In this document: one piece after another, positions 1,967-55,648 of the stretch
Layout: each line of letters opens with the position of its first letter
Numbering within the stretch: position 1 is the stretch's first letter
IMG/VR virus record: IMGVR_UViG_3300020172_001601
Location: 1-64,000 of that record
Strand: one strand, 5' to 3'
Length of the DNA: 64,000 nucleotides
Program-made: the position numbers and the translations under genes
The notes under the pieces: model-generated
Told to the model about the DNA's origin: nothing
Database searches by the model: none
The model's input: the letters and a program-made list of their open reading frames with translations, nothing else

Positions 1967-3190
1967 ATGAAAATCTCGATCTTTACACCAACGCATAAGC
2001 CGGTCTATCTCGACCGGCTTTTTCGTTCTCTTCAAGAACAGACATATTCAAATTGGGAATGGGTAATTGTTCCCAATAATGGTGCAGTAGTTGAGCCAAT
2101 TGATGATGAGCGAGTGAAGATATTTCCTTGCAATGATTCAGATAACATTGGTTTTCTAAAACGATTTGCTGCTGGCAAAGCCACTGGTGAAGTTGTTGTT
2201 GAAGTCGATCATGACGACGAGCTTTTCTCAACTGCCATTGAAGAATGTGCGAATGCTTTTGCGGACCCCACTGTTGATTTTGCATATTCCAATTGCTGTG
2301 ATGTGCGAGAGAATTATGTCCCTCGTTGTTTCGGTCCAGAATGGGGTTGGATCAATCGTGTTTGCAAATTCAAGAATCATGATTTGATTGAAACTGTTTC
2401 GTTCCCGCCAGACCCCGCTTCAATTAGCAAAATATGGTACGCTCCGAATCACTTCCGGGCGTGGCGTAAAGAGTTCTATGATCGTATTGGCGGTCATGAC
2501 GCCTCTTTGGATGTGTTGGATGACCAGGATATTATGTGTCGCACATATATTCAGGGCAAAATGTTCCACATCGACAAGCCACTTTATGTTTATCATTTGC
2601 ACCAGGAAAACACCTGCTATGGCGAGAAGAATGCCAAGATTCAAGAAGGCACGTTGATGCTTCACGACAAGTACATCTACCAACTTGTCGAACGATGGTG
2701 CGATCTGAACAATTTGCGCAAAATTGACTTATGCGGTGGTCACAGCAAGCCCGAAGGTTATGAAAGCGTCGATCTCGAACGTGGCGACATACAAGCAGAC
2801 TTGAATGGGCGATGGCCTTTTGAAGATGGTTCGGTAGGCGTGTTTCGTGCGCATGATGCTCTCGAACACTTGAAAGACCCAATCAATACGATGAAGGAAG
2901 CATATCGGTGTCTGGCTCCAGACGGTTGGTTCTTGACTCAAACGCCGTCTACAGATGGTCGTGGGGCCTTCCAAGACCCAACGCACGTTAGTTTCTGGAA
3001 CAGCAATAGTTTCTGGTATTACACCCGTGCAGAGCAGGCGAAGTACATCAATACTCCGGCTCGTTTTCAATTGAATCGCATCAAGAATTTCTTCCCAAGC
3101 GATTGGCATCAGTTCCACAATATCATGTACGTCAAAGCAGATTTGCTGAAGCTCACTGATACTCGGATTCCTGGTGGAGTAGAAATCTGA
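1967..3190 (+). CDS. GT2 glycosyltransferase fused to a class I SAM-methyltransferase-like domain
   Basis: N-terminal ISIFTPT...SLQEQTYSNWEWVIV and VDHDD (DxD); C-terminal IDLCGG...ADLN..WPF...HDALEHL...GAFQDPTH. Confidence 0.85.
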   Translation: MKISIFTPTHKPVYLDRLFRSLQEQTYSNWEWVIVPNNGAVVEPIDDERVKIFPCNDSDNIGFLKRFAAGKATGEVVVEVDHDDELFSTAIEECANAFADPTVDFAYSNCCDVRENYVPRCFGPEWGWINRVCKFKNHDLIETVSFPPDPASISKIWYAPNHFRAWRKEFYDRIGGHDASLDVLDDQDIMCRTYIQGKMFHIDKPLYVYHLHQENTCYGEKNAKIQEGTLMLHDKYIYQLVERWCDLNNLRKIDLCGGHSKPEGYESVDLERGDIQADLNGRWPFEDGSVGVFRAHDALEHLKDPINTMKEAYRCLAPDGWFLTQTPSTDGRGAFQDPTHVSFWNSNSFWYYTRAEQAKYINTPARFQLNRIKNFFPSDWHQFHNIMYVKADLLKLTDTRIPGGVEI

Positions 3191-3228
3191 TTGTAAAGCA
3201 AAATAAATACTTGCTGCACGTCTTGGCC

Positions 3229-3257
3229 TTTATTCAATCTTTGGCTTGGTCTATAAT
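3229..3257 (+). promoter_or_regulatory. Sigma70-like promoter TTTATT-N17-TATAAT
   Basis: Perfect TATAAT with 17-nt spacing, upstream of an AAGGAG RBS and the AAA ATPase. Confidence 0.6.
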
Positions 3258-3285
3258 CCCCTGACCTCGAACAAGGAGTTGTCAT

Positions 3286-8969: not shown

Positions 8970-9510
8970 CGTGGTTTATATCGACACGCCGTATAGACCT
9001 GAAGCTGGCAGCTTTTGCAAGCCCAAGGACATTGACGGCGATAGATATAAAGTTGGACAGTGGTATTATTGTCGAGATTTATTCCACGGCCAACTATACA
9101 ATCTGAGTTTGTTTTTCTTTTCCCATGATTCCACCAAAGGGCATTGCGTAGCCGCTTTTATGCGGAAGGTTGAAGAAATGTTGAATGTGGAGCCACGTTC
9201 AACATTTGGCCCAACTCAACGCAAAACCATTATGTGGATTGAACCGTCTCGGTGGTGGACAGTTCGAGCGATGCGTAGATCATTGTTCACAATATTGCTC
9301 CGAGCAGGATGCCAATATTCGCCAAGCAAGGATAATTTTGAAGAAGCACTCTTCAGCGATCCTTACACCATGAGTACCAAGTATGCAGTTAAAAGATTCT
9401 TTGCTGGTAATACAGCATATACTGGAAGAAAGCGTGGTTGGTACAAACAGTTTTATGAAAGTAAACCAACAGAACAAGAAGTCAATTCTTTGTTAGTTGA
9501 GCCTTACTAA
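8950..9510 (+). CDS. Hypothetical protein, paralog of 52248..52886
   Basis: Start re-called to ATG 8950 (AGGA RBS). Motifs CR..F, FSH, STF..T, RSL.TI.LR.G..Y...KDNF..ALF are shared with the paralog. Confidence 0.75.
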   Translation: MTSKFGDVVYIDTPYRPEAGSFCKPKDIDGDRYKVGQWYYCRDLFHGQLYNLSLFFFSHDSTKGHCVAAFMRKVEEMLNVEPRSTFGPTQRKTIMWIEPSRWWTVRAMRRSLFTILLRAGCQYSPSKDNFEEALFSDPYTMSTKYAVKRFFAGNTAYTGRKRGWYKQFYESKPTEQEVNSLLVEPY

Positions 9511-10017
9511 TTGTGGTTTGCGTGCAAACCAAACGCCGTCCTCTTCTTTGAATTCTTTTACGCCTAACGATTCAATTGTTTTCTTTATTGAATCATTCAT
9601 GGTAAAGTTGTGTCCAGCAATGATTCCTCCGGGTTTGATTTTTGGATACCAGTTTTTTATGTCTTTGATTTCGCCGCCGTCTATAAAGACAGCAAAGACG
9701 GCCTCGTGTCCTACGTTGTGGGATGCAACTTCAGGCGTTACCATCATCGTACTGATACAGTCGATCACTCCAGCCTTGGTCATATTTTCGTTGAACTTGG
9801 CCAATGTTTCTCTAAAAGTATCGACACAGACAATTTTCACGTTCTTGCCAGACATTTTTGCTCTGGATGCCAAATAGCATGACGACTTGCCCAGCCATGT
9901 GCCGATTTCGATAATCGTGTCATTTTTGCTGGCTTCTCGAATGATTTGATCGTATATCTTGGCATATCCGAACCATCCCTCGATGTCCTGCCAGCCGAAT
10001 TTGTTGTTTAAGTCCAT
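9493..10017 (-). CDS. Class I SAM-dependent methyltransferase (Methyltransf_24-like)
   Basis: IIEIGTWLGKSS, CVDTF, VFIDG, WYPKIKPGGIIAGH. Confidence 0.85.
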   Translation of the reverse strand: MDLNNKFGWQDIEGWFGYAKIYDQIIREASKNDTIIEIGTWLGKSSCYLASRAKMSGKNVKIVCVDTFRETLAKFNENMTKAGVIDCISTMMVTPEVASHNVGHEAVFAVFIDGGEIKDIKNWYPKIKPGGIIAGHNFTMNDSIKKTIESLGVKEFKEEDGVWFARKPQLVRLN

Positions 10018-13205: not shown

Positions 13206-14006
13206 TTATTCCACAGGAACCTTTTCTCGTTGACGTTCCTCAGCCCAAGCCTTAGAAAAGGTTGGGTGTGGATATGGGATGGTTGCCAGCATTTCTCTGG
13301 TCTTCATAACCTCCCATTCAAAGCGTGGATTTTCTTTCTTTGACATTTCCACCACTCTATGGTCGGGCTGGCTTCCTGGTCCCCAAAACCAACTTTGCAT
13401 ACTGATCGTCTTGTCGATCATATTAGCATCACGTCGAACGAAGCCATAGTGATAGATGATGATTTCGTCAACTTGACGACCCATATATCGTGGATCGCAT
13501 TGCAATACTTCGGCGTCACCAAAAGCCGGACAATCCAGAGTCGCCAGTCGAACCACTTCGTCACTGACAGGTTTGTGTTCTTGTGCGATGTCATATCGTA
13601 AATAGTGATTGCAGTCACCCCAAAGGTTACAACGGCGAATCATATAGGAACGATTTGTCGGATGTTGTATGGCCTTTCTGATGGCCGGGAAACTGCGTTC
13701 ATGAATAACCTCATCAGCCTGAAGCATGAAATGCCAGTCTGTATTGAGGTATGACTTGGCAATATCGGCCAAGATTCTAAGTCGCTCGAATTTTTCGTGA
13801 CACTCCCAATTCGCTCCAGGGATTACCCTCAGCTTTGGCTGGCGGGCTTGAACCTGGGCAAGAAGGTCGAGTGTTCCGTCTGTGCTGCTGGCGTCTACGA
13901 CAACTACATCGTCGCATACAGCACAAAGACTGTCGAGGGCTTCAGCAACGCAATAATCAAACTGAATAGCGTTGCGAATAAACATTGAACCGCCAAGTGT
14001 AGGCAT
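13206..14006 (-). CDS. GT2-family glycosyltransferase
   Basis: VVVDASSTDGT, WHFMLQADE, IYHYGFVR; start re-called to ATG 14006. Confidence 0.85.
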   Translation of the reverse strand: MPTLGGSMFIRNAIQFDYCVAEALDSLCAVCDDVVVVDASSTDGTLDLLAQVQARQPKLRVIPGANWECHEKFERLRILADIAKSYLNTDWHFMLQADEVIHERSFPAIRKAIQHPTNRSYMIRRCNLWGDCNHYLRYDIAQEHKPVSDEVVRLATLDCPAFGDAEVLQCDPRYMGRQVDEIIIYHYGFVRRDANMIDKTISMQSWFWGPGSQPDHRVVEMSKKENPRFEWEVMKTREMLATIPYPHPTFSKAWAEERQREKVPVE

Positions 14007-14023
14007 GTGCTTTCTCTCTCTAC

Positions 14024-14650
14024 TTATTTTTTGAGTAGGCTTATGAATAGTCCGTTCCACCATCCTTGATCTAGCTCCTTTTCAAACAAGGTCTTCAGAT
14101 TGAGTTCTTGGATTGCTTGGCGGGTTCCCCGTTGAGGATCGGGCCAGTTCCAGTCATCGACCAAAAACAGAAAAGTATCATCCAACAGTGGATAGAAATA
14201 CGTTAGTGCTTTTAGTTGAGATTCGTAGCTGTGACAGCCATCATATAGGAAGAAATTGACAGGGTTAGGCAGTTCTTCTTTTGTCAAAGAAAAACAATCT
14301 TGCTCGTAGAATTTGTAACTGTTGGGCGTCAGAAGGCTGCTTGTATACTTAATGAATTCCTTCTTTGTCTCGCCGTCTTGGGCAAATTCTGACCAATTAT
14401 CTACGGCGATTGACGAAAGCAGCTTATTTTTGAAGTTTGTTGCAACAAAAGTTGCTCCTTTATGGACGCCGACTTCCAGGTAGTGTGATCCTGGAAGCTC
14501 GCCCAAATTATTCAATAAGTGTCTTATTTTGGGACTTGTGAAGCCAGGAGCTTCAAAAGCCTGACTGGTGAGTTTGGATTGTTCAGCTTCGGCCTTTTGG
14601 ATGGCTTCTTCGATGAACTTAACGATTGAGTCTTCTAGTGGTCTTTGCAT
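14024..14650 (-). CDS. Class I SAM-dependent methyltransferase (Methyltransf_24-like)
   Basis: YLEVGVHKGATF, AVDNWS, FLYDGCHSYESQ, VDDWNW. Confidence 0.85.
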   Translation of the reverse strand: MQRPLEDSIVKFIEEAIQKAEAEQSKLTSQAFEAPGFTSPKIRHLLNNLGELPGSHYLEVGVHKGATFVATNFKNKLLSSIAVDNWSEFAQDGETKKEFIKYTSSLLTPNSYKFYEQDCFSLTKEELPNPVNFFLYDGCHSYESQLKALTYFYPLLDDTFLFLVDDWNWPDPQRGTRQAIQELNLKTLFEKELDQGWWNGLFISLLKK

Positions 14651-14705: not shown

Positions 14706-14891
14706 ATGGACAAAAACTTTATCATCAGGTGTCCCAAGTGCCGGTGGGCTAGAATGTCTACGGGCCTCTCGGAAGACCTTAAAGACCTCAAAGAAATTGT
14801 GACTTGCTCAAATTGCGGCAAGCCACGGACTTTTCGTTGCCCTCAATGCGGGCAAATCGCAAAGCAAACCAGAATAAAGAGCAATAGTTAA
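14706..14891 (+). CDS. Small zinc-ribbon protein
   Basis: Three CxxC pairs (CPKC, CSNC, CPQC). Confidence 0.75.
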   Translation: MDKNFIIRCPKCRWARMSTGLSEDLKDLKEIVTCSNCGKPRTFRCPQCGQIAKQTRIKSNS

Positions 14892-16057
14892 TGAAACTCG
14901 TCAAGGCTTATCGTCGCAATCCCGGTGATGGGAAACCTGTCGCTAAGGAAGAGTTGGTCCCTGAGATCAAGTTCCATAAGCACAAGTTCAATAACCGGCC
15001 CCAACCCAAAGACAAGCGCCGAATCTTATTCATCACTTGTTTTAGTGAGTTCGGCTGTGAGTCATTGGCGTTGATGTATTGCATTCCCAAGATCATCCAA
15101 CAAAACCCAGGCACATACGTTATTTGTGTGGGCTGGTTCGGCAGAGAGTATCTGTACCGGCATTTGGTTGATGAGTATTGGGAGATGCACGAAGAGTTTC
15201 AATGGCTTCGTGAACACACTCAGGCGTTCCAGCACACATCCAAGAACCTGTCTAAGCTCGAAGAGTCCTTAAAGGACTTGGGACAGGTTTATAAGGGTGC
15301 CAGCATGGGGCAGATTTGTCTTGGCAACACTTGCCTTGATTGCCGCCATTTCTGGGGCAGCGAAAGTGAGTTGGCGCAGTGTGAAAAGTGTGGTTCTGAC
15401 AATATTGATCGAGCATTATTGGCAAACATTCAACACAATAAGAAGTTTGCGGTTCACATACCACAGCCTAGCTCTAAGGTTTTGGTTCAGGCTAGGTCTT
15501 ATTTGAAACCAAATTCGGTGGGCATTTTTGCTCGTGGTCGAATCTGCTATGGTCGTAATTTGCGACCGGAGTTTTATGAGCGATTGATCGCAAACCTGGA
15601 AGAACAGGGCTACAACCCTATTTGGCTGGGCGAGAAACAAAGTGTATTGCCGTGTCCGGTTCCGCATATCACTGACTTCAGCCGTTTGCCGGAGTCTCGC
15701 AACCTGGAGTTGACATTAGCAATCATTAGCCAGCTAAGGTTCACTGTTCAGTTCTGGACAGCCAGCACACGCCTTTCGTCTATGATGAATGTGCCTTGGA
15801 TATTGTTTGAGTCGCCAGACCAAATCGTTGGCATGGGGCAGGAAGGCAAGCGTATTGCTTTGACTACAAACAACGACAAGAAGAAGCTGGTGCTTTCCCA
15901 ATACCACAATGTAATGGAAAAGGAAGACGAAGCACTGAAGCTAGTCAATCAAGCCATATCAGAGATGAACTTGAATAATTGGGATGACATCATTGGCTTA
16001 GTCGATCAACCGGAAATCATCAGAATGATGCTACTCAGACAGAGTATGTGGAGGTAA
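14891..16057 (+). CDS. GT-B/GT9-like glycosyltransferase with zinc-ribbon insertion
   Basis: LVDEYW, GYNPIWLGEK, DFSRL..SRNLELTLAIIS, STRLSSMMNVP; CLDC...CEKC insert; similar to the downstream gene. Confidence 0.55.
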   Translation: MKLVKAYRRNPGDGKPVAKEELVPEIKFHKHKFNNRPQPKDKRRILFITCFSEFGCESLALMYCIPKIIQQNPGTYVICVGWFGREYLYRHLVDEYWEMHEEFQWLREHTQAFQHTSKNLSKLEESLKDLGQVYKGASMGQICLGNTCLDCRHFWGSESELAQCEKCGSDNIDRALLANIQHNKKFAVHIPQPSSKVLVQARSYLKPNSVGIFARGRICYGRNLRPEFYERLIANLEEQGYNPIWLGEKQSVLPCPVPHITDFSRLPESRNLELTLAIISQLRFTVQFWTASTRLSSMMNVPWILFESPDQIVGMGQEGKRIALTTNNDKKKLVLSQYHNVMEKEDEALKLVNQAISEMNLNNWDDIIGLVDQPEIIRMMLLRQSMWR

Positions 16058-16059
16058 AC

Positions 16060-17202
16060 ATGAGTTCCGTTGTCGAATTTCTAAAGCGATCTGCCGAACG
16101 TAACGGATTTGCCCGTGAGCGGTTTGAGGAACGCAAAATCCCTACTGACCATAGCAACTTAATCGTTATGCCGTTCTTTGGCGATTTAAGAAGCACTATG
16201 GTTATGTCCAGTCTATTGCTTCAACGATATAGACAAGAAGTCAAAAACTCTAAGTATTTCATTCTTGCTTCTTGGCCAGGGTTCCAGGGCATATTCCCTT
16301 ATGTGGATGAATATTGGGCCATCAATGATGAGGCTCACATTAAGAAGTTCTACGAACAGTCTGATGGTTTTAGGAACAAGTCCGACTTAACAACGATTTA
16401 TACTCGCAATCTCAATGAGTTCTTTCGTGACGTTGTTGATTACAAAGAATTGATCCCATATTACCAGAATGGTTTCACAAGTCAGTTCTTTGAAAAGTTC
16501 AGCACCACTAAAAGGTTCCTTCCTTTCGTGCCGTCCTCGACAGCATTAGGCAAAGACTTTAATCGGGAACTATCCACAAAGGCTGGCTACAAGGTATTCA
16601 TTCATCCTTCGATATTCGCCAAGCAATGGCATATCGGCAGAAGTCAAAATGTTCGCACTAAACGAGAGTTCTGGACTGAACTGGTTGAGAAGCTCTTGGC
16701 GAACAATTATGTCCCTGTTATTTGGCAAAATTATCTTTCCTATGATATTTCGCAAGAATTCGTAGGTCGATGCCTATTTATAGGAGAGACAGATGTGGTT
16801 CGTGTCTTATCGGCGATGCGGACCACGGGCTGTGTTCTGGACGTGTTCAATGGTTTGTCACGTCTGGCAATATTGGCCCGATGTCCATTCGTAGCCGTTG
16901 ATGAGCGTTCTAGGTATACGAACCTCAAAGAATACGAGATTGACGACTTGTGTGCCTCGGACATTCCGAAGGAATATATTTTCACTTTTTCCACTATAAT
17001 ATCAGACGGCAACCCATACAACTGGAGCCAGGATATTTTCCAGTCGATATTGAAAAAGTTGGATAATTTCCTGCCTGAGTTAAACCGAGACGAGTGGCCT
17101 TCGACGGGTGAAACCACTGAGGTCGTACCGTATAAAGAGTATGTGCGAACCAACGAGCGAATCAAGCTCGGCACACGACTTTTGAAGATTACTAGAGATT
17201 GA
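16060..17202 (+). CDS. GT-B/GT9-like protein, paralog of 14891..16057
   Basis: FGD...YFILASWPG...YVDEYW, LSRLAILARCP; GGAGG RBS before ATG 16060. Confidence 0.5.
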   Translation: MSSVVEFLKRSAERNGFARERFEERKIPTDHSNLIVMPFFGDLRSTMVMSSLLLQRYRQEVKNSKYFILASWPGFQGIFPYVDEYWAINDEAHIKKFYEQSDGFRNKSDLTTIYTRNLNEFFRDVVDYKELIPYYQNGFTSQFFEKFSTTKRFLPFVPSSTALGKDFNRELSTKAGYKVFIHPSIFAKQWHIGRSQNVRTKREFWTELVEKLLANNYVPVIWQNYLSYDISQEFVGRCLFIGETDVVRVLSAMRTTGCVLDVFNGLSRLAILARCPFVAVDERSRYTNLKEYEIDDLCASDIPKEYIFTFSTIISDGNPYNWSQDIFQSILKKLDNFLPELNRDEWPSTGETTEVVPYKEYVRTNERIKLGTRLLKITRD

Positions 17203-17216
17203 TTAAGGAGCCTAAA

Positions 17217-17492
17217 ATGGCGTGCAAAGTTGAACTGCGTGATCTGCCACCTAATGCAAGCTGGCAGGAAAGAGATATTGCCTTCAAGAAGATGTTTTCA
17301 GTCTTCAAGAAACAGGTTGCTGAGGCAGGAATACTGCAACAGTGTAAGAAGCACGAATTTTATGAAAGTCCTGGCGAAAAGAAACGCCGCAAGAAGAAGG
17401 AATCCCATAACGCACGGCTCAAGGCCAAGCTCCGGGAAAGTTTCCCAGAGCGAAAGCCTAAGAAAGATACCAAGAACAAAGGTGATAAATGA
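17217..17492 (+). CDS. rpsU: Ribosomal protein bS21 homolog
   Basis: FKKQVAEAGILQQCKKHEFYESPGEKKRRKK matches the bS21 core FKR...AGIL...R.RE.YEKP...R.RK; AAGGAG RBS. Confidence 0.85.
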   Translation: MACKVELRDLPPNASWQERDIAFKKMFSVFKKQVAEAGILQQCKKHEFYESPGEKKRRKKKESHNARLKAKLRESFPERKPKKDTKNKGDK

Positions 17493-17773
17493 GTACCGCT
17501 AAGAAATCCAATATTATGAGCCTATCGGTTGATCTTGAAATTCAAGATCGACTGAAGGCGGTCGCAAAGAAGCGAAATGTCAGCGTTTCTAAATTGGTGC
17601 GTGATATGGTTGAGAAAAACCTATCATCTACCGATGAAGACGTGGACACGGTTATTTTCAAGGTTCCCAATAGTGCCAAAGTCACAGAGGTTGAATTGCG
17701 TAAGTGGTTGGCACCACGGATTGAAAATATTGTCAGGGCATTGGCTATGGACGTTGCCAACGGCAGGGGGTGA
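17489..17773 (+). CDS. Ribbon-helix-helix (CopG/Arc-like) DNA-binding protein
   Basis: IMSLSVDLEIQDRLKAVAKKRNVSVSKLVRDMV. Confidence 0.75.
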   Translation: MSTAKKSNIMSLSVDLEIQDRLKAVAKKRNVSVSKLVRDMVEKNLSSTDEDVDTVIFKVPNSAKVTEVELRKWLAPRIENIVRALAMDVANGRG

Positions 17774-17788
17774 TGATACAATTTCCCA

Positions 17789-18292
17789 ATGAAACCAAAA
17801 GCCGCACCCCTTGCGATAGTTCCCGTAGCCGATATTCCACAGGCGGTGGATGTCCCTGTCGATAATTTACTTCCTGTCTTTCGCACCATCACGCAGATGG
17901 AACAACTTTGCACAGCACAAGAAGGAATTGGCCTATCAGCGGTTCAGGTAGGCATTCCCTGGAAGTTATTTATCGTCCAAAGAGGCCACGGTTACGAATA
18001 TTACATCAACTGTGAGTATAATGGCATTGGTGAAAAACAAAAATCTATCGAAGGATGTTTATCTCTTCGAGACTCGCAGGGCAATTTGCGACGATTCGAG
18101 GTTGACCGATATTCCTCGATTGCCGTAAAGGGCAAGCAACTGAAAATATCATCCGACTCCCCTTCTTTGGTTTTGGATGATGTGGATCACATCGAACACG
18201 ATCTATATGCAGTTGTTTTTCAGCACGAGATAGATCACCACAATGATGTCCTTATCAGCGACATTGGCACCGAAGTCGAACTCACGAGGTAA
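17789..18292 (+). CDS. def: Peptide deformylase
   Basis: All three signature motifs: GIGLSAVQVG, EGCLS, QHEIDH. Confidence 0.95.
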   Translation: MKPKAAPLAIVPVADIPQAVDVPVDNLLPVFRTITQMEQLCTAQEGIGLSAVQVGIPWKLFIVQRGHGYEYYINCEYNGIGEKQKSIEGCLSLRDSQGNLRRFEVDRYSSIAVKGKQLKISSDSPSLVLDDVDHIEHDLYAVVFQHEIDHHNDVLISDIGTEVELTR

Positions 18293-34780: not shown

Positions 34781-35019
34781 TGATTGACATCAAGTATGGA
34801 ATTTTGGCGGTTGATTCTCGACAAGACGCAGAGGGCATGAATCCTATTCTTCATTTTTGTGGATATGAAGACCCGCCCAACGAAGATGATTTTGATGATT
34901 TGAGACATGAGTTATCTACAGACCAGGAGTTTGGCTTAACTGAAATGATGGATTATGTTGTTTTGGTTGAAGCGAGTTCTGAAGTTGTAGCCATGTATAG
35001 GGAAATGCTAAATGAATAA
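34780..35019 (+). CDS. Small acidic hypothetical protein
   Basis: TAATG-coupled start 34780. Confidence 0.65.
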   Translation: MIDIKYGILAVDSRQDAEGMNPILHFCGYEDPPNEDDFDDLRHELSTDQEFGLTEMMDYVVLVEASSEVVAMYREMLNE

Positions 35020-35860
35020 AATTGGAGTAGTCGGTGCCGGTATTGTGGGCAATGCCTTTTATGAAGGCATGAAGCACGCTTTCGATGTCATCAGATACGA
35101 CAGACGGCCAGAGTGTTCGGACGTAGACAGCCTACTCAAATTGGCCCACCGTCTCGACGGACCTGTTTTCGTGTGCGTTCCGACCCCGATGAACCCAGAC
35201 GGCAGTGCGAGTACGGCGATTGTCGAAAGTGTCCTAGCTGAGTTGGAGTATGCGTTTTCGTTGATGCCGGAGGCTAGTCGCATTGTAGTCATCAAGTCTA
35301 CCGTTCCACCGGGGACGTGCGACCGCTTGGGCGAGCAGTTCAAGTCCCTTCAGGTCGTATTTAATCCTGAGTTTTTGACTGAAGCCCAGCCAGTCGAAGA
35401 TTTCAAAAATCAGGATCGTATTATTGTGGGTGGTAAGTCAGAGGCTACACAGATTGTGGCCGACATTTACTCAGTTGCTTATCCTGGCGTTCCTCAATTC
35501 CAGTGTGACGCAACGACCGCAGAGATGGTCAAGTATGTCGGAAATTGCTTCTTAGCTACCAAAATTAGTTTTGCAAATGAAATTAGTCAAATTTGTGAAA
35601 AGTTAGGCGTGGCATATGATGGCGTAATCAATTTGGCAATGCTGGATAAACGCTTGGGACGATCTCATTGGAAGGTTCCAGGCCCAGATGGTCATTATGG
35701 ATTTGGGCTTACATGCTTTCCGAAGGACATTAACGCTCTGATTGCTGTCGCCATCGAATTGGGAGTTGACCCTAAGATTCTTCGAGCAGCTTGGGAGAAG
35801 AACTTAGAAGTTAGACCCGAAAAAGATTGGGAAAAGATGAAAGGCAGGGCTGTCTTATGA
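35012..35860 (+). CDS. UDP-glucose/GDP-mannose dehydrogenase family, short phage form
   Basis: GAGIVG, FVCVPTP, KSTVPPG, NPEFL, AEMVKY..N, GFGLTCFPKD; lacks the C-terminal UDP-binding domain. Confidence 0.9.
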   Translation: MNKIGVVGAGIVGNAFYEGMKHAFDVIRYDRRPECSDVDSLLKLAHRLDGPVFVCVPTPMNPDGSASTAIVESVLAELEYAFSLMPEASRIVVIKSTVPPGTCDRLGEQFKSLQVVFNPEFLTEAQPVEDFKNQDRIIVGGKSEATQIVADIYSVAYPGVPQFQCDATTAEMVKYVGNCFLATKISFANEISQICEKLGVAYDGVINLAMLDKRLGRSHWKVPGPDGHYGFGLTCFPKDINALIAVAIELGVDPKILRAAWEKNLEVRPEKDWEKMKGRAVL

Positions 35861-39885: not shown

Positions 39886-40641
39886 ATGGCAAATTCAATT
39901 ACGCCGCACACGAACCAAGCGGTCCACAATCCCCTAGAGGGCGACAGGCCAGAACTGAGCGTCAAACTTCACGAGAATACCGACGAGCATGTTTCGATCA
40001 TCGTGGTTCACAAGGACAGACCTGAATACCTCAACATCTGTCTCCAGTCTATTGCAGTAGCTTCTTTTAACAACAACTATGAAATCATCGTTGTTGACAA
40101 CGGCTCTGGCAAGGAGTCTCAGGAGTTTCTGGACGAGATTGAAGGCGAAGTGAAGGTTGTTCGCAATGAGAAGAACTTGTATTGGTCAGCCGCAGCCAAC
40201 AAGGGCGTGCAAGCTGCTGACAAGAACAGCAAGTATTTTATTTTCATGCACTGTGACGTGGTTGTTCTCAACCCAGCGTGGATTGACTTGTTGATTAACG
40301 TCTCCGAGGCACAACAGTCTGGATTCGTTGGTATTGATACTCAGACCTACATGATGGGAAACCAGCGAGTTGACTTCTTGCAGGAATATGTCCTATTGAT
40401 TACTCGTGAAGCGTGGGACGATATTGGCCCTTGGCCAGAACAGTTGCCGCAGATCGGGCCATCTTTCATCATGACGTTAAAGGCTCAGAATCGTGGACAC
40501 AAGCCACAGATCATGAAGAATCAGATCATTCACCATTATCGCATTTTCAGTTTGGACATCAGCGAGTTTGAGCGAATGACTGAACAAGCTATGGTGACAT
40601 TGCCCAAGTTGATGAGCGACGTACAGTCGAGGCCACTATGA
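39886..40641 (+). CDS. GT2-family glycosyltransferase
   Basis: VSIIVV, YEIIVVDNGS, NLYWSAAANKG, FMHCDV. Confidence 0.85.
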   Translation: MANSITPHTNQAVHNPLEGDRPELSVKLHENTDEHVSIIVVHKDRPEYLNICLQSIAVASFNNNYEIIVVDNGSGKESQEFLDEIEGEVKVVRNEKNLYWSAAANKGVQAADKNSKYFIFMHCDVVVLNPAWIDLLINVSEAQQSGFVGIDTQTYMMGNQRVDFLQEYVLLITREAWDDIGPWPEQLPQIGPSFIMTLKAQNRGHKPQIMKNQIIHHYRIFSLDISEFERMTEQAMVTLPKLMSDVQSRPL

Positions 40642-41321
40642 AAGTAACTGCTAAGGATTCCAGTCTGGCTGTATTGGATGAAGTCTTTGAACAAGAGCGA
40701 TTTCAATACTTTTGGAACTACTTTAATGGTTTGGAATACGCTTATAAATCAAGCACTGCTTGGCATAAAGTGTGGCGAATCAATGACGGGCAGGTTTTAG
40801 CCAGTCTGTCTTCACATCATTCAAAGGCTCCTTTTAACAGCCCAATGGATTGGATTGACCAAGCCGTGACTGCTGTGGCAGGTCAGCTTGAAGATGTGGT
40901 CGGCAAGAAGGGCGAAGACTGGAACGACATCATTTATACGCCGTACATATATCCTGCCGGAACCAAGATTTCTTGGCATGATGACACTGGATATACTGGA
41001 GCGTGTATTTTTTACCCACACCAAGAGTGGAGTCCGCATTGGGGCGGCGAGCTTTATATCGCTAAAACACCGCCTCCAGAAGAGAGCAAACAGCTTGTTT
41101 TGAATAACGCCAAGGGATCAGTGGTAGACACGATGACTCGTGATTACGTTGCTCCTCTTTTGAACGCTTATGGAATGGGAACTTACATTGCTCCGTTGCC
41201 TAATCGCATGGTGTTCACTTCGGGAGCCGTGTGGCACGCTGTCAATCGTGTAGACGTAGCGGCGGGCGACAAGATGCGATGTTCTATCGTGGCTTTCTTT
41301 TTGCCTGAGAAGGTAAGCTAG
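40638..41321 (+). CDS. 2OG-Fe(II) oxygenase (prolyl-hydroxylase-like)
   Basis: WHDD (HxD), WGGEL, PNRMVF...WHAV...R.S. Confidence 0.88.
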   Translation: MKVTAKDSSLAVLDEVFEQERFQYFWNYFNGLEYAYKSSTAWHKVWRINDGQVLASLSSHHSKAPFNSPMDWIDQAVTAVAGQLEDVVGKKGEDWNDIIYTPYIYPAGTKISWHDDTGYTGACIFYPHQEWSPHWGGELYIAKTPPPEESKQLVLNNAKGSVVDTMTRDYVAPLLNAYGMGTYIAPLPNRMVFTSGAVWHAVNRVDVAAGDKMRCSIVAFFLPEKVS

Positions 41322-49492: not shown

Positions 49493-49501
49493 GGAGGATT
49501 T

Positions 49502-50731: not shown

Positions 50732-50734
50732 ATA

Positions 50735-51373
50735 ATGCGGCCATACGAAGAGTATTTTAAGCGACATTCAATCGCTGATGTTCCTGTGGCGCATCACTGC
50801 TCTGCCGGGTCATTGATTTTACGAACCACCGATCCTTCTATTTGGAAGAGTCGGTGGGTTCTCGTTTCTATGCGGTGGGAGAACCACGACCACCATCCAG
50901 GCCAATACCAAATTGGGATCAACTATCCAATTCACGATGGATACATCAACGATCAGTTGTTCACTCAATCGCCATCCATAGCAAAGAAGTGGCATGAATA
51001 TGAAGATTTTTTTCTTGATTGGAGTGGCAACCTTAAAGCAGCCGTGCCAGTGATTGGCCCACATGAAGTTGTGTTGGCAGCATGGGAAATGTTTGTTTTT
51101 TCTTACGATAGCTGGTTCATCAAGCAGCCCTACGAAATCAAAAGATCGTTATTTGAAGGGCTGGACAAAGACAATCCAATACATCATCGGTATCAACATT
51201 ACCAGGATGTTGCTATATTTCTTTCAACACACCATCCGGCAGTATTGCGTGCGTGGAAATACGAAGTGCTGGCTCGTGTGCAGAATTATTCTGATTGGTT
51301 GGCTGCAATCGTAGATAAGAAATGCAAATTGGAAGAGAAAAATATTCGCCCGTTCAAATTAGAAATCCCATAA
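50735..51373 (+). CDS. Hypothetical protein
   Basis: 212-aa ORF in the operon. Confidence 0.7.
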   Translation: MRPYEEYFKRHSIADVPVAHHCSAGSLILRTTDPSIWKSRWVLVSMRWENHDHHPGQYQIGINYPIHDGYINDQLFTQSPSIAKKWHEYEDFFLDWSGNLKAAVPVIGPHEVVLAAWEMFVFSYDSWFIKQPYEIKRSLFEGLDKDNPIHHRYQHYQDVAIFLSTHHPAVLRAWKYEVLARVQNYSDWLAAIVDKKCKLEEKNIRPFKLEIP

Positions 51374-52197: not shown

Positions 52198-52247
52198 TTG
52201 TCTGGCTAAATAAACAGATAATGCCACCTGTAGAGAGCGAGGGTAAC

Positions 52248-52886
52248 ATGAAGGCATCGTTTGGAGAAGTAAAAAAATTCAAGTGTCATGTTCAGCCTCC
52301 TGTTGGCAATTATGCTTTGGAGGCCGAGCCGCCCAAAGATGTGCATTGGGATCATTGTCGAGAGCAGTTTGCCGCTAAGTTCAATGAGTTGACTCCTGGG
52401 TTTTATTTTTCGCACCCTGTAGGCAAGTCACATGATGTGGGAGAGTTTCTTGCTAAATTTGAAACCATCATTGGATTGACTGCTTTTTCGACGTTTTCCA
52501 AGACCGAAAAAGAATCGGTGCTTTGGATCGTGCCAGCCGCATTCTGGACGAATTGTCAAATGAAGAGATCGTTGATGACGATTATTCTTCGCTGTGGGAT
52601 CAACTACGATTCTGCCAAAGACAATTTCGACGATGCTTTATTTGGTGAATACAAAGAAACCACTTATGTAAAAGAAACCCGATCAGCAATGCTTCGTTTT
52701 ATGTTTGGTTTCACGAAATTCACTGGCACCCTCAATCCAATAACTTCTACCAGTTCAGTGATAAAGCATGGCTGGCGTGAAGAGTTTCAAAAATTAGACG
52801 ATTCAACTATTCGCCGCCGACTGGTTCTCCCAGAAGGAGCGGCTAGAGAATCAAGCATCATAGGCGTGGAGTCTCTTTGGACATGA
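52248..52886 (+). CDS. Hypothetical protein, paralog of 8950..9510
   Basis: WDHCREQF, FYFSH, STFSKT, KRSLMTIILRCG.NY...KDNFDDALF, GW..EF; start 52221 or 52248; CTAAATA at 52206. Confidence 0.75.
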   Translation: MKASFGEVKKFKCHVQPPVGNYALEAEPPKDVHWDHCREQFAAKFNELTPGFYFSHPVGKSHDVGEFLAKFETIIGLTAFSTFSKTEKESVLWIVPAAFWTNCQMKRSLMTIILRCGINYDSAKDNFDDALFGEYKETTYVKETRSAMLRFMFGFTKFTGTLNPITSTSSVIKHGWREEFQKLDDSTIRRRLVLPEGAARESSIIGVESLWT

Positions 52887-53185
52887 AATCATTAACAGAA
52901 TCAACATTTGATACAGATGTTACCGCCGATTCAAATTGGCTGGTTATGTTTTGGGCCGCTTGGTGTGGACCTTGTATTGACGTGAAATATCTCGAAGAAT
53001 TTGAAGTGGTCACTCCTGGCACCCTTGTTGGTCGGGTCAATGTTGAGGAAAACCCAGATTTAGCAGCCACTTACTCTATTGTTGCTGTCCCTACTTATGT
53101 CCTTTTTAAGCATGGACAGCCAGTCAAACGGTTGATCGGTTTGCAAACAAAAGAGTCGCTTCAAGAAGCTGTTAGATCACAATGA
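52883..53185 (+). CDS. trxA: Thioredoxin
   Basis: FWAAWCGPC, VNVEENP, VPT. Confidence 0.9.
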   Translation: MKSLTESTFDTDVTADSNWLVMFWAAWCGPCIDVKYLEEFEVVTPGTLVGRVNVEENPDLAATYSIVAVPTYVLFKHGQPVKRLIGLQTKESLQEAVRSQ

Positions 53186-54231
53186 AAAGAGTTTTACTTA
53201 CTGGCGTCGGTGGTTTCATCGGCGCTCACTGCGTTGAATATTTCCTCAAAAACACAGATTGGTTCATAATCGGTTTGGATTCCTTCAGACACAAAGGAAC
53301 GTATTCCAGGTTGTCTGAAATAGAAAATCTTGATCCATCCCGATTTCAATTGTTAAGGCATGATCTTTCAGTTCCTCTTGATGTTCAGCTTGAAAACAGA
53401 ATCATGTCTCGTCGCATTGGCGACCGTGGGCAGACAGTTGAAGCAAAGCTCGACTACATCATCAATATGGCCTCTGATAGTGCTGTAGAGCGGTCTGTGA
53501 GCGATCCCGGCTGGTGCTGGCGAAACAATTGCGAACTCGCTTACAACATGCTTGAGTTCGCTCGTCGTGTTAAGCCAAAGATATTCTTTCATGTCAGCAC
53601 TGATGAAGTGTATGGCGACTGTCCAGAAGACTATTCTCATCCAGAGTGGGATGTGATTGTGCCATCGAATCCATATGCTGCTTCTAAGGCGGCACAAGAG
53701 GCTCTGGCAATTTCTTATTGGCGAACTTTTGATGTTCCTGTAGTTTTGACCAATTGCATGAACTGCATTGGTACATGGCAAGACAAAGAAAAGTTCCTTC
53801 CTAAGTTGATTTGGAAAATAGCCACAGATCAACAAATGGAAATTTACGCCGATACGAAGCCAGATGGCGAGTGTGTGATTGGCAGCAGGTTTTATCTACA
53901 TTGTGACAATCACGCTGACGTATTCAAGTATTTGGCGAGTAAACCAATTGCCATGTACAACAAAGGCGATCAAAGACCTGACAGATACAATGTCGTTGGC
54001 GAAGTGGAACTAGACAACTTAGAAATGGCAAAGTTGGTTGCTCAAATCATGGGCAAAGATTTGAAGTGTAAGTTGGTTCCTTCTGAATCTGCTCGGCGTG
54101 GTTATGATCGTCGATATGCTTTAGATGGAAGTAAACTCAAAAACATGGGCTGGACTCCACCTGTTGAATTTCGCAAGGGATTAGAAGACATCGTTAAATG
54201 GACTCTGGAGCATCCGTGGTGGGTAGTCTAG
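53182..54231 (+). CDS. rmlB: dTDP-glucose 4,6-dehydratase-like extended SDR
   Basis: TGVGGFIG, STDEVYG, PSNPYAASKA, EKFLPK, DRRYALD. Confidence 0.88.
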   Translation: MKRVLLTGVGGFIGAHCVEYFLKNTDWFIIGLDSFRHKGTYSRLSEIENLDPSRFQLLRHDLSVPLDVQLENRIMSRRIGDRGQTVEAKLDYIINMASDSAVERSVSDPGWCWRNNCELAYNMLEFARRVKPKIFFHVSTDEVYGDCPEDYSHPEWDVIVPSNPYAASKAAQEALAISYWRTFDVPVVLTNCMNCIGTWQDKEKFLPKLIWKIATDQQMEIYADTKPDGECVIGSRFYLHCDNHADVFKYLASKPIAMYNKGDQRPDRYNVVGEVELDNLEMAKLVAQIMGKDLKCKLVPSESARRGYDRRYALDGSKLKNMGWTPPVEFRKGLEDIVKWTLEHPWWVV

Positions 54232-55091
54232 GTTTATTGCCGAACAAAGTGGCTTTTCCTCCTCGTGAAAACTGGCTCAGGCAGCTAGTGCATCACGAGC
54301 AAGACGATTACCATCGTGGATTTTACCAATACTTTGTGAATACGGCTGTGTATGCAGGGCTTGAAGTCATTTGTGATGATAGCTTGGGAGCCATCAGTAA
54401 CCAAGCTATTTCGTTTGTTGTGGACGGCATTAAGTGCGCTTACGATATTTCTGATTATAGCGTTATTCAACCACAAGCCTGGAGCGGTGAATTCAAATGT
54501 TACTTTATGATTCATCATCTGCCTGTATTTGATGTTTACCCTAATCTTGGATCGGTCCCGCAGCAGTCCTTTTTTGATTGGGATGAATACAATCTATTGG
54601 TTGAAGGTCAGTATGATTGTTCTTCAGACTTGATTTTGCATTGTCAAAATTTAGGGCAGATAGCTCGCCGGAAGTTGGCCAGAAAGATATTGGTTGACAA
54701 AGGCTATAACTTAACTACAGAATGTTGGCCGATTTCTGATTTTTGGAAGCTGGGACAAAAATGCTGCGCCAGCGTCCACATCCCTGGGTCTACTCCTCAC
54801 ATACTGGATCGAGGGCAACTTCAATTGATGGCGATGGGAGTTTGCACTGTGTCGCCAAATATCTATTGTTCATTGGGCGAACTTCGACCTGAACCCAATA
54901 TTCATTATGTTTGTGTTCGAGATGACTTTTCTAATCTGATTGAAAAAGTAGATTGGTGTTTGGCCAATCCAACACGTTGTATTGAGATTGGGCAAAATGC
55001 CAAGAAGTTGTTTAATGATTCTTGCACACCACATGCCATATGGAAATACATCAAGAAGCGTATCTCGCCAACCATTAAGATGTTCGCTTAG
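54198..55091 (+). CDS. Glycosyltransferase-like protein (GT90/CgeB-like C-terminus)
   Basis: P..HYV.V.DDFSNLIEK.DWC..NP....EIG.NA motif; start uncertain. Confidence 0.6.
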   Translation: MDSGASVVGSLGLLPNKVAFPPRENWLRQLVHHEQDDYHRGFYQYFVNTAVYAGLEVICDDSLGAISNQAISFVVDGIKCAYDISDYSVIQPQAWSGEFKCYFMIHHLPVFDVYPNLGSVPQQSFFDWDEYNLLVEGQYDCSSDLILHCQNLGQIARRKLARKILVDKGYNLTTECWPISDFWKLGQKCCASVHIPGSTPHILDRGQLQLMAMGVCTVSPNIYCSLGELRPEPNIHYVCVRDDFSNLIEKVDWCLANPTRCIEIGQNAKKLFNDSCTPHAIWKYIKKRISPTIKMFA

Positions 55092-55648
55092 TATCCTAGT
55101 AGCGATTTGACTCGTTCAAAGTCGGCCTCGATGTTGTCACATCGCCAGACCCAAAAAGCTCCCACGTTGAGTGTAGGGTGGTAGTTCGGGGCGACAATAG
55201 AAGCAAAGCCCTCGAAGTCTTCTGGCCACCATCCTGATTTGTGGCATTTCGGATCAGGGTTGCCCACTTCAACCATGTATTCGCCGAGCGGCGTGAATAG
55301 AATTTGCTTATCAGAAATAGACTTCATTCGTTCTACGAGACGGAATCCGTCTTCTTTGGACAGGTGTTCGATGCCATCAGAGCAGTTTGCCACTGTGTAA
55401 TGTTTGTTGAAGCACTTGTGGTTTCCAAGAACGTCAGCTTGAACAAATCGGTGCATTTGGCCTGGAATATTCCAGCAGTCCAAAGCATCGACATACACTT
55501 TATCTTTGAACTCCAAATTTCTGGTGACAGTTGCCTCGCAAGAACAAAGGTCAATGAGTGTTTGTTCATCAATGGTGTTGCCAATGATAGCCCTGATTAC
55601 TTTCTCATAAAGAGGGAAGCTGCCGTGATCTTGGATGTCTAGTTTCAT
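55088..55648 (-). CDS. SAM-dependent methyltransferase-like protein
   Basis: LIDLCS, DGIEHLSKEDG, LFTP.G, HKSGW; CTAAATA 5 nt before the ATG. Confidence 0.75.
   Translation of the reverse strand: MKLDIQDHGSFPLYEKVIRAIIGNTIDEQTLIDLCSCEATVTRNLEFKDKVYVDALDCWNIPGQMHRFVQADVLGNHKCFNKHYTVANCSDGIEHLSKEDGFRLVERMKSISDKQILFTPLGEYMVEVGNPDPKCHKSGWWPEDFEGFASIVAPNYHPTLNVGAFWVWRCDNIEADFERVKSLLGY

What the first reader, a model, noticed from the sequence alone, without database searches (positions are those of the whole stretch)
1967..55648. Dispersed phage glycan-building toolkit, partly under late-type promoters
Seen: GT2-MTase fusion directly after the collagen genes, GT2s (13206, 39886), GT9-like pair (14891, 16060), GT-like 54198, three Methyltransf-type genes (9493, 14024, 55088), a UDP-sugar dehydrogenase and RmlB-like dehydratase. 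At least two MTases (14650, 55648) carry the late motif. Established: giant eukaryotic viruses glycosylate and methylate their fibrils with such kits. Inference: this phage makes methylated glycans for its virion, or remodels the host surface.
Basis: partly seen in the sequence, partly recalled or inferred. Interest (0 to 1): 0.6.

Follow-up and report, generated by a model that had tools for sequence, protein, structure and literature searches.

The report
Sugar and methyl enzymes, huge phage
A 340-kb freshwater phage really does carry about a dozen sugar-transferring and methylating enzymes, but they are several unrelated modules rather than one kit; the best-supported role is decorating its collagen-like fibres, and one conserved enzyme pair sits unexpectedly in an operon with a ribosomal protein.

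Summary
The GT2-methyltransferase fusion after the collagen genes, two more GT2s, two Methyltransf_24 genes and an RmlB-type 4,6-dehydratase (T-D-E and YxxxK present) are confirmed by profile. The "GT9-like pair" and "GT-like 54198" have no Pfam hit but fold as GT-B: GT9 heptosyltransferases are nearest for the pair (Z 16), POGLUT/GT90 for 54198. The third methyltransferase is nearest to Hen1 RNA 2'-O-methyltransferases. The "UDP-sugar dehydrogenase" is a conserved 282-aa form without the UDP-binding domain.

It is not one kit. The GT9-like pair is a core gene pair in all 53 related huge-phage contigs, always in the order Zn-ribbon, GT9A, GT9B, bS21, with RHH and peptide deformylase following in most. 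The MT24-GT2 operon occurs only in the nearest relative. The GT2-MTase fusion ends an operon of four collagen-like fibre genes, and its GT2 subfamily lies near collagen-like genes in 26 of 80 viral loci against 0 of 53 controls.

The "late motif" is real: TAWATA fixed 10-11 nt before the ATG of 16 genes, and TATAAATA in a relative. Late timing is untested, because no RNA runs exist.

Best reading: cytoplasmic glycosylation and methylation of fibre proteins, plus modules of other function. Ordinary in kind, with one interesting part.

The parts
1..594 (+). 3' part of a collagen-like fibre gene, cut by the contig end. G-N-Q/G-F-V repeats plus a C-terminal beta domain.
   Evidence: Collagen profile matches; translation. 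It is the 461-aa gene in the 390-kb assembly.
596..1966 (+). Collagen-like fibre protein, 456 aa. About 92 uninterrupted G-X-Y triplets with almost no Pro or Lys. Six N-X-S/T sequons, all outside the G-X-Y run.
   Evidence: PF01391, 158 bits; sequence; repeat and sequon counts.
1967..3190 (+). GT2 (residues 4-109, DHDD motif) fused to a class I SAM methyltransferase (residues about 250-340). Its start follows directly on the collagen gene's stop (TAAATG).
   Evidence: At least 55 full-length relatives in IMG/VR. 41% identical to Synechococcus phage S-CRM01 g90.
9493..10017 (-). Methyltransf_24 methyltransferase. Accessory: found in few relatives.
   Evidence: PF13578, 46.5 bits. RMNT_CmcI only 18.8 bits, below its cut-off. 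Synteny.
13206..14063 (-). Weak GT2 (Glyco_tranf_2_4), second gene of a two-gene minus-strand operon.
   Evidence: 27.9 bits against a 27.5 cut-off; phrog_13126 E 3e-5. Present only in the nearest relative L021.
14024..14650 (-). Methyltransf_24 methyltransferase, first gene of that operon. GGTATATAATCCC lies directly before the ATG.
   Evidence: PF13578, 29.3 bits; phrog_1458 E 8e-24; motif.
14706..14891 (+). 61-aa zinc-ribbon protein, first gene of the conserved operon.
   Evidence: Conserved in 43 of 53 relatives.
14891..16057 (+). GT9-like GT-B protein A, with an invariant Cys4 insert (C148, C151, C164, C167).
   Evidence: AF2 pLDDT 90. Foldseek: GT9 and TibC, E 7e-6. VIA: WaaF and 3tov Z 16.2, next fold 10.7. 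989 homologues.
16060..17202 (+). GT9-like GT-B protein B, paralogue of A.
   Evidence: hhalign 94%, E 1.4e-7 over 249 columns. 502 homologues, most of about 380 aa, which fits a start at 16060.
17199..18292 (+). bS21, a ribbon-helix-helix protein and peptide deformylase, in a tight same-strand run with the GT9-like pair (bS21 and RHH start 4 nt inside the preceding gene).
   Evidence: synteny in 53 loci.
35012..35860 (+). 282-aa UDP-glucose/GDP-mannose-dehydrogenase-like protein. It has the Rossmann motif and the catalytic Cys (GLTCFPKD) but no C-terminal UDP-binding domain.
   Evidence: The same 282-aa length at 42% identity in L085.
39886..40641 (+). GT2, conserved even in distant relatives of the clade.
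   Evidence: PF00535, 70 bits; 67-77% identity in L047, L068-L070 and L073.
40638..41321 (+). P4H-type 2OG-Fe(II) oxygenase (HxD and distal His present). It overlaps the GT2 stop and is absent from the relatives examined.
   Evidence: PF13640, 31 bits; sequence; no hits in relatives.
53182..54231 (+). NDP-hexose 4,6-dehydratase (RmlB-like): GxxGxxG, T-D-E and YxxxK all present. The only sugar SDR in the 340 kb.
   Evidence: Absent between thioredoxin and the GT90-like gene in relative L159.
54198..55091 (+). GT90/POGLUT-like GT-B glycosyltransferase. It overlaps the dehydratase gene by 34 nt.
55088..55648 (-). Class I methyltransferase nearest to Hen1, with invariant D91, E94, H95 and H157. 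CTAAATA starts 11 nt before the ATG.
   Evidence: 84% identical in L159, where the box reads TATAAATA.

Best explanation
The span holds several independent modules, not one glycan kit.

(A) Fibre decoration, the best-supported part. The GT2-methyltransferase fusion (1967-3190) is the last gene of an operon of four collagen-like fibre genes. It most likely adds a sugar to those fibre proteins in the host cytoplasm and O-methylates it before assembly. This would work like chlorovirus A064R, a GT plus MTase on capsid glycans, and in spirit like mimivirus L230 acting on viral collagen.

(B) The thioredoxin, RmlB-like dehydratase and GT90-like genes run in one tight direction. They probably turn a host NDP-glucose into a 4-keto-6-deoxy sugar and pass a sugar to a protein acceptor. 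The GT2 plus P4H-like pair and the accessory MT24-GT2 operon are further strain-level decorations of unknown acceptor.

(C) The GT9-like pair is not part of this. It is a core, always-paired GT-B gene pair co-oriented and tightly packed with bS21 and peptide deformylase, and its acceptor is unknown.

(D) The 55088 methyltransferase is more likely an RNA (ribose 2'-O) methyltransferase than a glycan one.

Shown: the folds and families, the gene order, the associations, and the fixed-position TAWATA box. Inferred: every donor, acceptor and timing.
For: - Families and motifs.
- Fibre operon in the 390-kb assembly of the same phage: a 290-aa gene, collagen-like 446 aa, a 164-aa gene, then collagen-like 488, 461 and 456 aa, then GT2-MT. 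All are on the + strand, and the 164-aa, 488-, 461- and 456-aa products share a C-terminal domain (the 446-aa one ends differently).
- Relative L121: an Mtd_N fibre gene, three collagen plus Peptidase_S74 genes, two P4H-like genes, a GT2-DUF6445 gene, then GT2-MT.
- Neighbours of the fusion in 41 loci: DUF6445 in 29, GT2 in 19, and also T4 neck, tail collar, Peptidase_S74 and Collagen.
- Collagen-like runs occur in 26 of 80 loci holding this GT2 subfamily against 0 of 53 control loci (970 kb). Fisher p = 5e-7, or 2e-6 with three duplicates removed.
- A tail or baseplate module lies at 311.8-340 kb.
- No toolkit protein has a membrane segment.
- GT9-like fold. Core synteny.
- Hen1-like. An RNA ligase and a CCA-adding enzyme are in the genome.
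Against: - No glycan or modified residue has been observed; all of this is context.
- The collagen repeats are G-N-Q/G-F-V with almost no Pro, Lys or Thr, so the classical hydroxylysine or BclA-type sites are missing.
- In the only cultured relative, S-CRM01, the fusion sits among psbA, hli and phoH, not by fibre genes.
- Only 9 of 55 full-length relatives have collagen nearby.
- The dehydratase stands alone: no nucleotidyltransferase and no second SDR enzyme (a reductase would be one) in 340 kb; a 3,5-epimerase was not searched for.
- The record is incomplete (69%).
Confidence: 0.45

Rival explanations
1. Host-surface remodelling: the enzymes alter host LPS, capsule or wall glycans during infection, to block superinfection or change recognition. 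This is the usual proposal for glycosyltransferase-rich cyanophages.
For: GT9 neighbours are LPS heptosyltransferases. GT2 NCBIfam near-hits are wall and EPS enzymes, all far below their cut-offs. The literature proposes this for S-SCSM2R, which has 13 GTs (PMC12801897).
Against: No toolkit protein has a membrane segment, while the ion-channel control scores 2.69. No NDP-sugar nucleotidyltransferase was found. No GtrA/B-like family came up among the genes scanned, though no dedicated search for flippases or polymerases was run. The GT9-like pair is fixed in a translation-gene operon. The fusion is tied to fibre genes.
Confidence: 0.2
2. DNA hypermodification: one or more of the GT-B or GT2 enzymes glycosylate phage DNA bases, as in T4, to evade restriction.
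For: The GT-B fold is that of T4 beta-glucosyltransferase (my own knowledge). The GT9-like pair lies between DNA polymerase III alpha with a DHH protein and the rest of the core block. The literature raises this possibility for cyanophage GTs.
Against: No thymidylate-synthase-family protein, the family that supplies hydroxymethylases, in 340 kb. The nearest structures are GT9 and POGLUT protein or LPS transferases, and no DNA glucosyltransferase appears among the listed matches. The immediate operon partners are bS21 and deformylase.
Confidence: 0.1
3. The GT9-like pair, and perhaps other members, are not enzymes of glycan synthesis at all. They could be structural or regulatory GT-B-fold proteins, or they could act on the translation apparatus.
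For: No GT9 profile hit. A GT9-like non-enzymatic subunit of the chloroplast NDH complex (7wff_a) is among the top structural matches, Z 14. The order GT9A, GT9B, bS21 holds across 53 loci.
Against: The fold match covers both Rossmann domains, and many residues are invariant across 40 sequences, as expected of an enzyme.
Confidence: 0.2

Closest known systems
Chlorovirus PBCV-1 A064R (with A061L)
   Same: A virus-encoded multidomain protein joining GT-A-type glycosyltransferase domain(s) to a class I SAM methyltransferase that methylates the sugar just added to a virion protein (PMC9614988).
   Different: A064R has three domains and acts on N-glycans of a eukaryotic virus capsid. Here there are two domains, a GT2 family domain, a phage, and no sequence relationship was tested. 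No activity is shown.
Mimivirus L230 and its collagen-like proteins
   Same: A virus with several collagen-like genes plus its own glycosyltransferase and a 2OG oxygenase for them (PMC9614988). Relative L121 has collagen genes, two P4H-like genes and GT2s in a row.
   Different: L230 hydroxylates Lys and glucosylates hydroxylysine. The repeats here have almost no Lys or Pro, the P4H-like gene is 37 kb away, and the GT is GT2 rather than GT25-like.
Mycobacteriophage virion glycosylation (Freeman et al. 2023; seen only as a citation, details from my own knowledge)
   Same: Phage-encoded glycosyltransferases modifying the phage's own structural proteins in the cytoplasm.
   Different: Different GT families, hosts and targets (capsid and tail tube). 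That paper could not be opened here.
Glycosyltransferase-rich T4-like cyanophages (S-SCSM2R, P-SSM2, S-CRM01)
   Same: Many dispersed GTs and NDP-sugar SDR enzymes in a large phage. S-CRM01 g90 is a full-length homologue of the fusion at 41% identity.
   Different: Those genes lie among auxiliary metabolic genes, and their function is equally untested. They have no GT9-like pair next to bS21.
GT9 heptosyltransferases WaaC/WaaF and the protein heptosyltransferase TibC
   Same: Nearest folds to 14891-16057: Z 16.2, 13.7 and 13.3, spanning both domains.
   Different: About 10-13% identity and no profile hit. A Cys4 insert lies between the two domains. The genes form a paralogous pair in a phage translation-gene operon.
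Hen1 RNA 3'-terminal 2'-O-methyltransferase
   Same: Best solved relatives of the 55088 family: 3jwi and 3jwg at E 3e-9, also HENMT1. The invariant acidic and His residues are where, as I recall it, Hen1 binds its metal.
   Different: Only the 186-aa catalytic domain is present. No Pnkp partner was looked for, and the substrate is untested.

Membership tests
GT2 (PF00535, GT-A) | Profile score over the curated cut-off | tested here: met
   1967-3190: 36.2 against 23.3. 39886-40641: 70.2. 13206-14063 only 21.4 on PF00535, but 27.9 against 27.5 on PF13704, so borderline.
GT2 (PF00535, GT-A) | Asp-rich nucleotide-sugar and metal motif (DxD-type) | tested here: met
   Read from the sequence: DHDD (fusion), DASSTD and ADE (13206), DNGS and HCD (39886). 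Activity is not testable here.
GT9 (PF01075 heptosyltransferases) | Sequence-profile membership | tested here: not met
   No Pfam, NCBIfam or PHROG match for either paralogue. Family profiles find no GT9 chain in the PDB.
GT9 (PF01075 heptosyltransferases) | GT-B fold with GT9 enzymes as nearest structures | tested here: met
   1psw and 3tov Z 16.2, 2h1f 13.7, 4rap 13.3, next unrelated fold 10.7. Foldseek E 7e-6. B is tied to A by hhalign at 94%.
GT9 (PF01075 heptosyltransferases) | Catalytic Asp after strand 1, the C-domain D-S/T-G..H-L-A motif, and ADP-heptose as donor | not tested
   No residue-level comparison with a GT9 sequence was run. Set against the motif as I remember it, A reads W-T-A-S-T-R-L-A and B reads L-D-V-F-N-G-L-S-R-L-A. 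This is a lead only.
GT90 (PF05686, POGLUT/CAP10) | Profile or structure relationship to POGLUT enzymes | tested here: met
   Family profile against the PDB: POGLUT2 E 6.6e-5, POGLUT1 E 0.0028. Foldseek top hits are POGLUT2 and POGLUT1. One homologue carries a weak PF05686 hit. The window protein itself has no Pfam hit.
Methyltransf_24 (PF13578) | Profile score over the cut-off | tested here: met
   46.5 and 29.3 bits against 26.3.
Sugar O-methyltransferase (RMNT_CmcI, rhamnosyl O-MTase) | Score over the family cut-off | tested here: not met
   PF04989: 18.8 below 23.2. NF045824: 19.6 against 400. A glycan substrate is therefore only an inference from neighbours.
Hen1 methyltransferase | Closest solved relatives, and the metal-site residues | tested here: inconclusive
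   Profile E 2.7e-9 to bacterial Hen1 MTase domains. D91, E94, H95 and H157 are invariant. Their mapping onto Hen1's site is from memory. RNA-binding parts are absent.
UDP-glucose/GDP-mannose dehydrogenase | Three domains: NAD-binding, central (catalytic Cys) and C-terminal UDP-binding | tested here: not met
   N domain partial at 73.7 bits, central 86.3 bits, Cys motif GLTCFPKD. The protein ends 18 residues after the central domain, and the next ORF has no family. The short form is conserved.
dTDP-glucose 4,6-dehydratase (RmlB, TIGR01181) | Equivalog score | tested here: not met
   207.4 bits against a 365.1 cut-off, so the nucleotide specificity is open.
dTDP-glucose 4,6-dehydratase (RmlB, TIGR01181) | Extended SDR fold with T-D-E and YxxxK | tested here: met
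   PF16363 124.6 bits and PF01370 117 bits. GVGGFIG, STDEVYG and YAASK read in the sequence.
T4-type late promoter | TATAAATA-like box upstream of the gene | tested here: met
   TAWATA starts at -11 or -10 in 14 of the 43 sites found upstream of called starts, out of 133 in the genome. 16 genes carry it between -13 and -10. It reads TATAAATA in L159.
T4-type late promoter | Late expression, and dependence on a gp55/gp33-type factor | not testable with these tools
   No RNA runs hold this phage. A sigma-70-family gene lies at 48022-48564. One box-bearing gene (gp2-like, 311818) lies directly upstream of the tail/baseplate gene run, but five are methyltransferases.

The most novel reading that the evidence does not exclude
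The GT9-like paralogue pair (14891-17202) always lies in the order Zn-ribbon, GT9A, GT9B, bS21, usually followed by peptide deformylase, across a clade of huge freshwater phages with contigs up to about 600 kb. It could be a glycosyltransferase that modifies the translation apparatus itself: a ribosomal protein such as the phage bS21, a translation factor, or an RNA. That would be phage-directed glycosylation of the host's protein-synthesis machinery.
Probability: 0.1. Interest if true: 0.85.

Novelty: new member of a known kind. Interest (0 to 1): 0.45.

Why it matters
Virus-encoded glycosylation is well worked out for chloroviruses and mimiviruses and has been shown for a few mycobacteriophages. 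For huge environmental phages it is only a list of annotations.

This work sorts the list into testable units:
- A fibre operon that ends in a GT-MTase fusion whose GT2 subfamily tracks collagen-like genes across viruses. This gives a cheap co-expression and mass-spectrometry test.
- A core GT-B pair tied to phage ribosomal protein bS21, which nobody seems to have noted. It could link glycosylation to the translation takeover that huge phages are thought to perform.
- A fixed-distance late-like box that predicts leaderless transcripts.

If fibre glycosylation holds, it would bear on host recognition and on how such phages evade grazers or immune recognition.

Tried and rejected
- Megablast of the first 20 kb against phage records found no match.
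- Direct PDB sequence searches with the four unassigned proteins gave nothing usable. Profiles of both GT9-like families also found no GT9 chain.
- A complex prediction for GT9A with GT9B gave no verdict (score 0.00, controls not run). It is evidence neither for nor against binding.
- ESM Atlas searches for the unknown ORFs 51322-52197 and 52188-52886 gave only sub-threshold or mixed leads.
- Tail sheath (PF04984) and terminase (PF17289) profiles found nothing in the 340 kb. The 'late' label could therefore not be checked against capsid or terminase genes. Only a baseplate wedge and a gp2-like protein were recognised.
- GT1 (PF00534), NTP_transferase and thymidylate-synthase families are absent from the record. 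The record is incomplete, so absence is weak evidence.
- Run search: only DNA runs from freshwater and sediment were found, none on record as RNA.
- The DUF6445 protein (77983-78894) has no solved relative.
- The idea that the collagen repeats are classical hydroxylase substrates was rejected after reading them (G-N-Q, G-F-V).
- The 282-aa dehydrogenase as a broken gene was rejected, because the same length is kept at 42% identity in another virus.
- The Freeman 2023 paper could not be opened.
- No other genetic code was used, although two tRNAs with anticodon CUA exist. All genes discussed are open in code 11.

Full report
**What the sequence is.** The window is the first 64 kb of a single 340,341-bp IMG/VR virus record. 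The record is linear, CheckV rates it 69% complete, and its GC is 47.8%. A 390,142-bp assembly of the same phage exists and adds about 50 kb upstream of window base 1. It is a huge phage:
- 52 tRNAs.
- DNA polymerase III alpha, PhoH, DnaJ, a Cpn10-like protein, bS21, IF3 and peptide deformylase.
- A baseplate wedge protein at 326760-328316.

Relatives of its core genes lie on viral contigs of up to 572 kb, and on a 595-kb uncultured phage genome in GenBank. Only DNA runs from freshwater and sediment hold it.

**Check of the observation.** Profile searches confirm most of the list.

Confirmed directly:
- 1967-3190 has a GT2 domain (residues 4-109, 36.2 bits against a cut-off of 23.3) and a class I methyltransferase domain (Methyltransf_11, 33.6 bits). 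It starts directly after the stop of collagen gene 596-1966.
- 39886-40641 is a clear GT2 (70 bits).
- 13206-14063(-) is borderline (27.9 against 27.5 on Glyco_tranf_2_4).
- 9493-10017(-) and 14024-14650(-) are Methyltransf_24.
- 53182-54231 is an extended SDR with GxxGxxG, the T-D-E triad of 4,6-dehydratases and YxxxK. It scores below the RmlB equivalog cut-off, so its nucleotide specificity is open.

Four genes had no family hit at all and needed more work:
- For 14891-16057 I collected 989 homologues, aligned 40 of them and obtained an AF2 model with pLDDT 90. Foldseek and an independent all-against-representatives search both put GT9 enzymes first: WaaF and 3tov at Z 16.2, WaaC 13.7, TibC 13.3, and the next fold at 10.7.
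- 16060-17202 is its paralogue (hhalign probability 94%, E 1.4e-7).
- 54198-55091 has only eight homologues. Their profile finds POGLUT2 and POGLUT1, and the model's best structural matches are the same.
- 55088-55648(-) belongs to a class I methyltransferase family whose nearest solved members are Hen1 RNA 2'-O-methyltransferase domains (E 3e-9). D91, E94, H95 and H157 are invariant.

One of the three 'glycan' methyltransferases more probably acts on RNA.

The 'UDP-sugar dehydrogenase' (35012-35860) keeps the Rossmann motif and the catalytic Cys motif but ends 18 residues after the central domain. The same 282-aa form occurs at 42% identity in another virus, so it is a conserved short form rather than a wreck.

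**One kit or several.** I fetched 53 viral loci around homologues of the GT9-like gene and mapped all window proteins onto them. The order Zn-ribbon, GT9A, GT9B, bS21, RHH protein, peptide deformylase is kept in nearly all of them. It lies between polymerase III alpha with the DHH protein on one side and IF3, Cpn10 and DnaJ on the other. The GT9-like pair is therefore a core gene pair of this phage clade in a block of translation genes. In contrast:
- The MT24-GT2 operon (13206-14650) is found only in the nearest relative.
- MT24 9493 is in few relatives.
- The P4H-like gene after GT2 39886 is in none of the relatives examined.
- The dehydratase is missing between thioredoxin and the GT90-like gene in relative L159.

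These genes have separate histories, so 'toolkit' overstates their unity.

**The fibre module.** In the 390-kb assembly the fusion gene closes a same-strand run: a 290-aa gene, a collagen-like gene (446 aa), a 164-aa gene, three more collagen-like genes (488, 461 and 456 aa), then GT2-MT. The 164-aa, 488-, 461- and 456-aa products share a C-terminal beta-rich domain; the 446-aa one ends differently.

At least 55 full-length relatives of the fusion exist in IMG/VR. Their neighbours are enriched in DUF6445, further GT2s, 2OG oxygenases, T4 neck and tail-collar proteins, Peptidase_S74 and collagen. One locus, L121, reads as follows: Mtd_N fibre protein, three collagen plus Peptidase_S74 proteins, two P4H-like oxygenases, GT2-DUF6445, GT2-MT.

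More distant cousins of the GT2 domain (30-36% identity) sit in two-GT proteins of 610-650 aa, downstream of very long collagen-like genes, in 17 of 25 AT-rich viral contigs. Overall, 26 of 80 loci with this GT2 subfamily have collagen-like runs, against 0 of 53 control loci (Fisher p = 5e-7; 2e-6 after dropping three duplicates). Relatedness among the loci inflates this figure, but the direction is clear.

The working model is cytoplasmic glycosylation and sugar methylation of fibre proteins, as A064R does for chlorovirus capsid glycans and L230 does for mimivirus collagen (PMC9614988).

There are caveats:
- The repeats here are G-N-Q, G-F-V and G-A-Q, with almost no Pro, Lys or Thr, so the known collagen acceptor sites are absent.
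- In Synechococcus phage S-CRM01 the 41%-identical homologue lies among psbA, hli and phoH.

**Other modules.** The dehydratase gene overlaps the GT90-like gene by 34 nt, which suggests coupling. However, it is the only sugar SDR, and no nucleotidyltransferase was found. Host NDP-glucose and perhaps host finishing enzymes would be needed, or the missing genes lie outside the record. No toolkit protein has a hydrophobic segment, whereas the ion-channel control does. No thymidylate-synthase-family protein was found. This lowers, but does not remove, the host-surface and DNA-glycosylation rivals. A Hen1-like enzyme would fit with the RNA ligase, the CCA-adding enzyme and the tRNA array of this genome.

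**The motif.**
- TAWATA starts at -11 or -10 from the ATG in 14 of the 43 sites found upstream of called starts, out of 133 in the genome. 16 genes carry it between -13 and -10, usually as CTAAATA and without a Shine-Dalgarno sequence.
- In relative L159 the box before the Hen1-like gene reads TATAAATA, the T4 late consensus as I know it, while the flanks differ.
- Its distance from the ATG predicts leaderless transcripts.
- Of the box-bearing genes, one (gp2-like, 311818) lies directly upstream of the tail/baseplate gene run, but five are methyltransferases and most are unknown.
- A sigma-70-family gene lies at 48022-48564.
- With no RNA data, 'late' remains a resemblance.

**Verdict.** Glycosyltransferase-rich large phages are already known (PMC12801897), so the kind is known. 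The useful results are the fibre-operon link of the GT2-MTase fusion and the unexpected fixed operon of a GT9-like pair with bS21.

Noticed in passing
window 17199-17492, 17789-18292, 30768-31346: Phage-encoded ribosomal protein bS21, peptide deformylase and IF3 in one conserved core block. bS21 directly follows the GT9-like pair in nearly all relatives.
   Followed up: partly
window 19983-21170: An indoleamine 2,3-dioxygenase gene (208 bits), which seems to me an unusual gene for a phage. It is present in only a few relatives.
   Followed up: no
window 4968-5840: An Ion_trans/Ion_trans_2 cation-channel gene just upstream of DNA polymerase III alpha. The polymerase start is probably 5860, not 5659.
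   Followed up: no
window 29137-30768, 33266-34780: A TPP-dependent enzyme and an aldehyde dehydrogenase (423 bits) lie just before the short dehydrogenase-like gene. Possibly a small metabolic cassette.
   Followed up: no
window 48022-48564: A sigma-70-family protein, 72% identical to a relative's protein that carries Sigma70_r4. A candidate factor for the phage's own promoters.
   Followed up: partly
whole record; 16 genes, e.g. window 24141, 14650(-), 55648(-); G000 206179, 247979, 311818: A TAWATA box fixed at -10/-11 of the ATG without a Shine-Dalgarno sequence, which predicts leaderless mRNAs. Five of the 16 genes are methyltransferases.
   Followed up: partly
G000:C1 72800-101233, 182011-182084, 182708-182778: An array of about 50 tRNAs, plus two tRNAs with anticodon CUA (amber-reading). 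No recoding was assumed; the genes studied are open in code 11.
   Followed up: no
L155:2410-2786 (390-kb assembly, about 47 kb upstream of window base 1): A phage-encoded tmRNA with tag peptide GETVKFPSAAPVALAA, just upstream of the collagen-like fibre operon.
   Followed up: yes
G000:C1 outside the window (e.g. upstream of 268554): A 19-mer family TAGGTCCAGTGTACCCTAG, enriched up to about 9-fold upstream of genes. None in the window.
   Followed up: partly
G000:C1 159336-159815 and 306298-307914: An RNA ligase (119 bits) and a tRNA nucleotidyltransferase. With the Hen1-like methyltransferase they could form an RNA repair or protection set.
   Followed up: no
L129-L153 (IMG/VR contigs, GC 31-35%; one labelled GVMAG): Two-GT proteins of 610-650 aa, whose C-terminal GT2 is a cousin of the fusion's GT2, lie downstream of collagen-like genes of up to 280 triplets.
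   Followed up: partly
G000:C1 312414-321752: A 3112-aa ORF with no PHROG match, just downstream of the gp2-like gene and upstream of the baseplate wedge gene.
   Followed up: no
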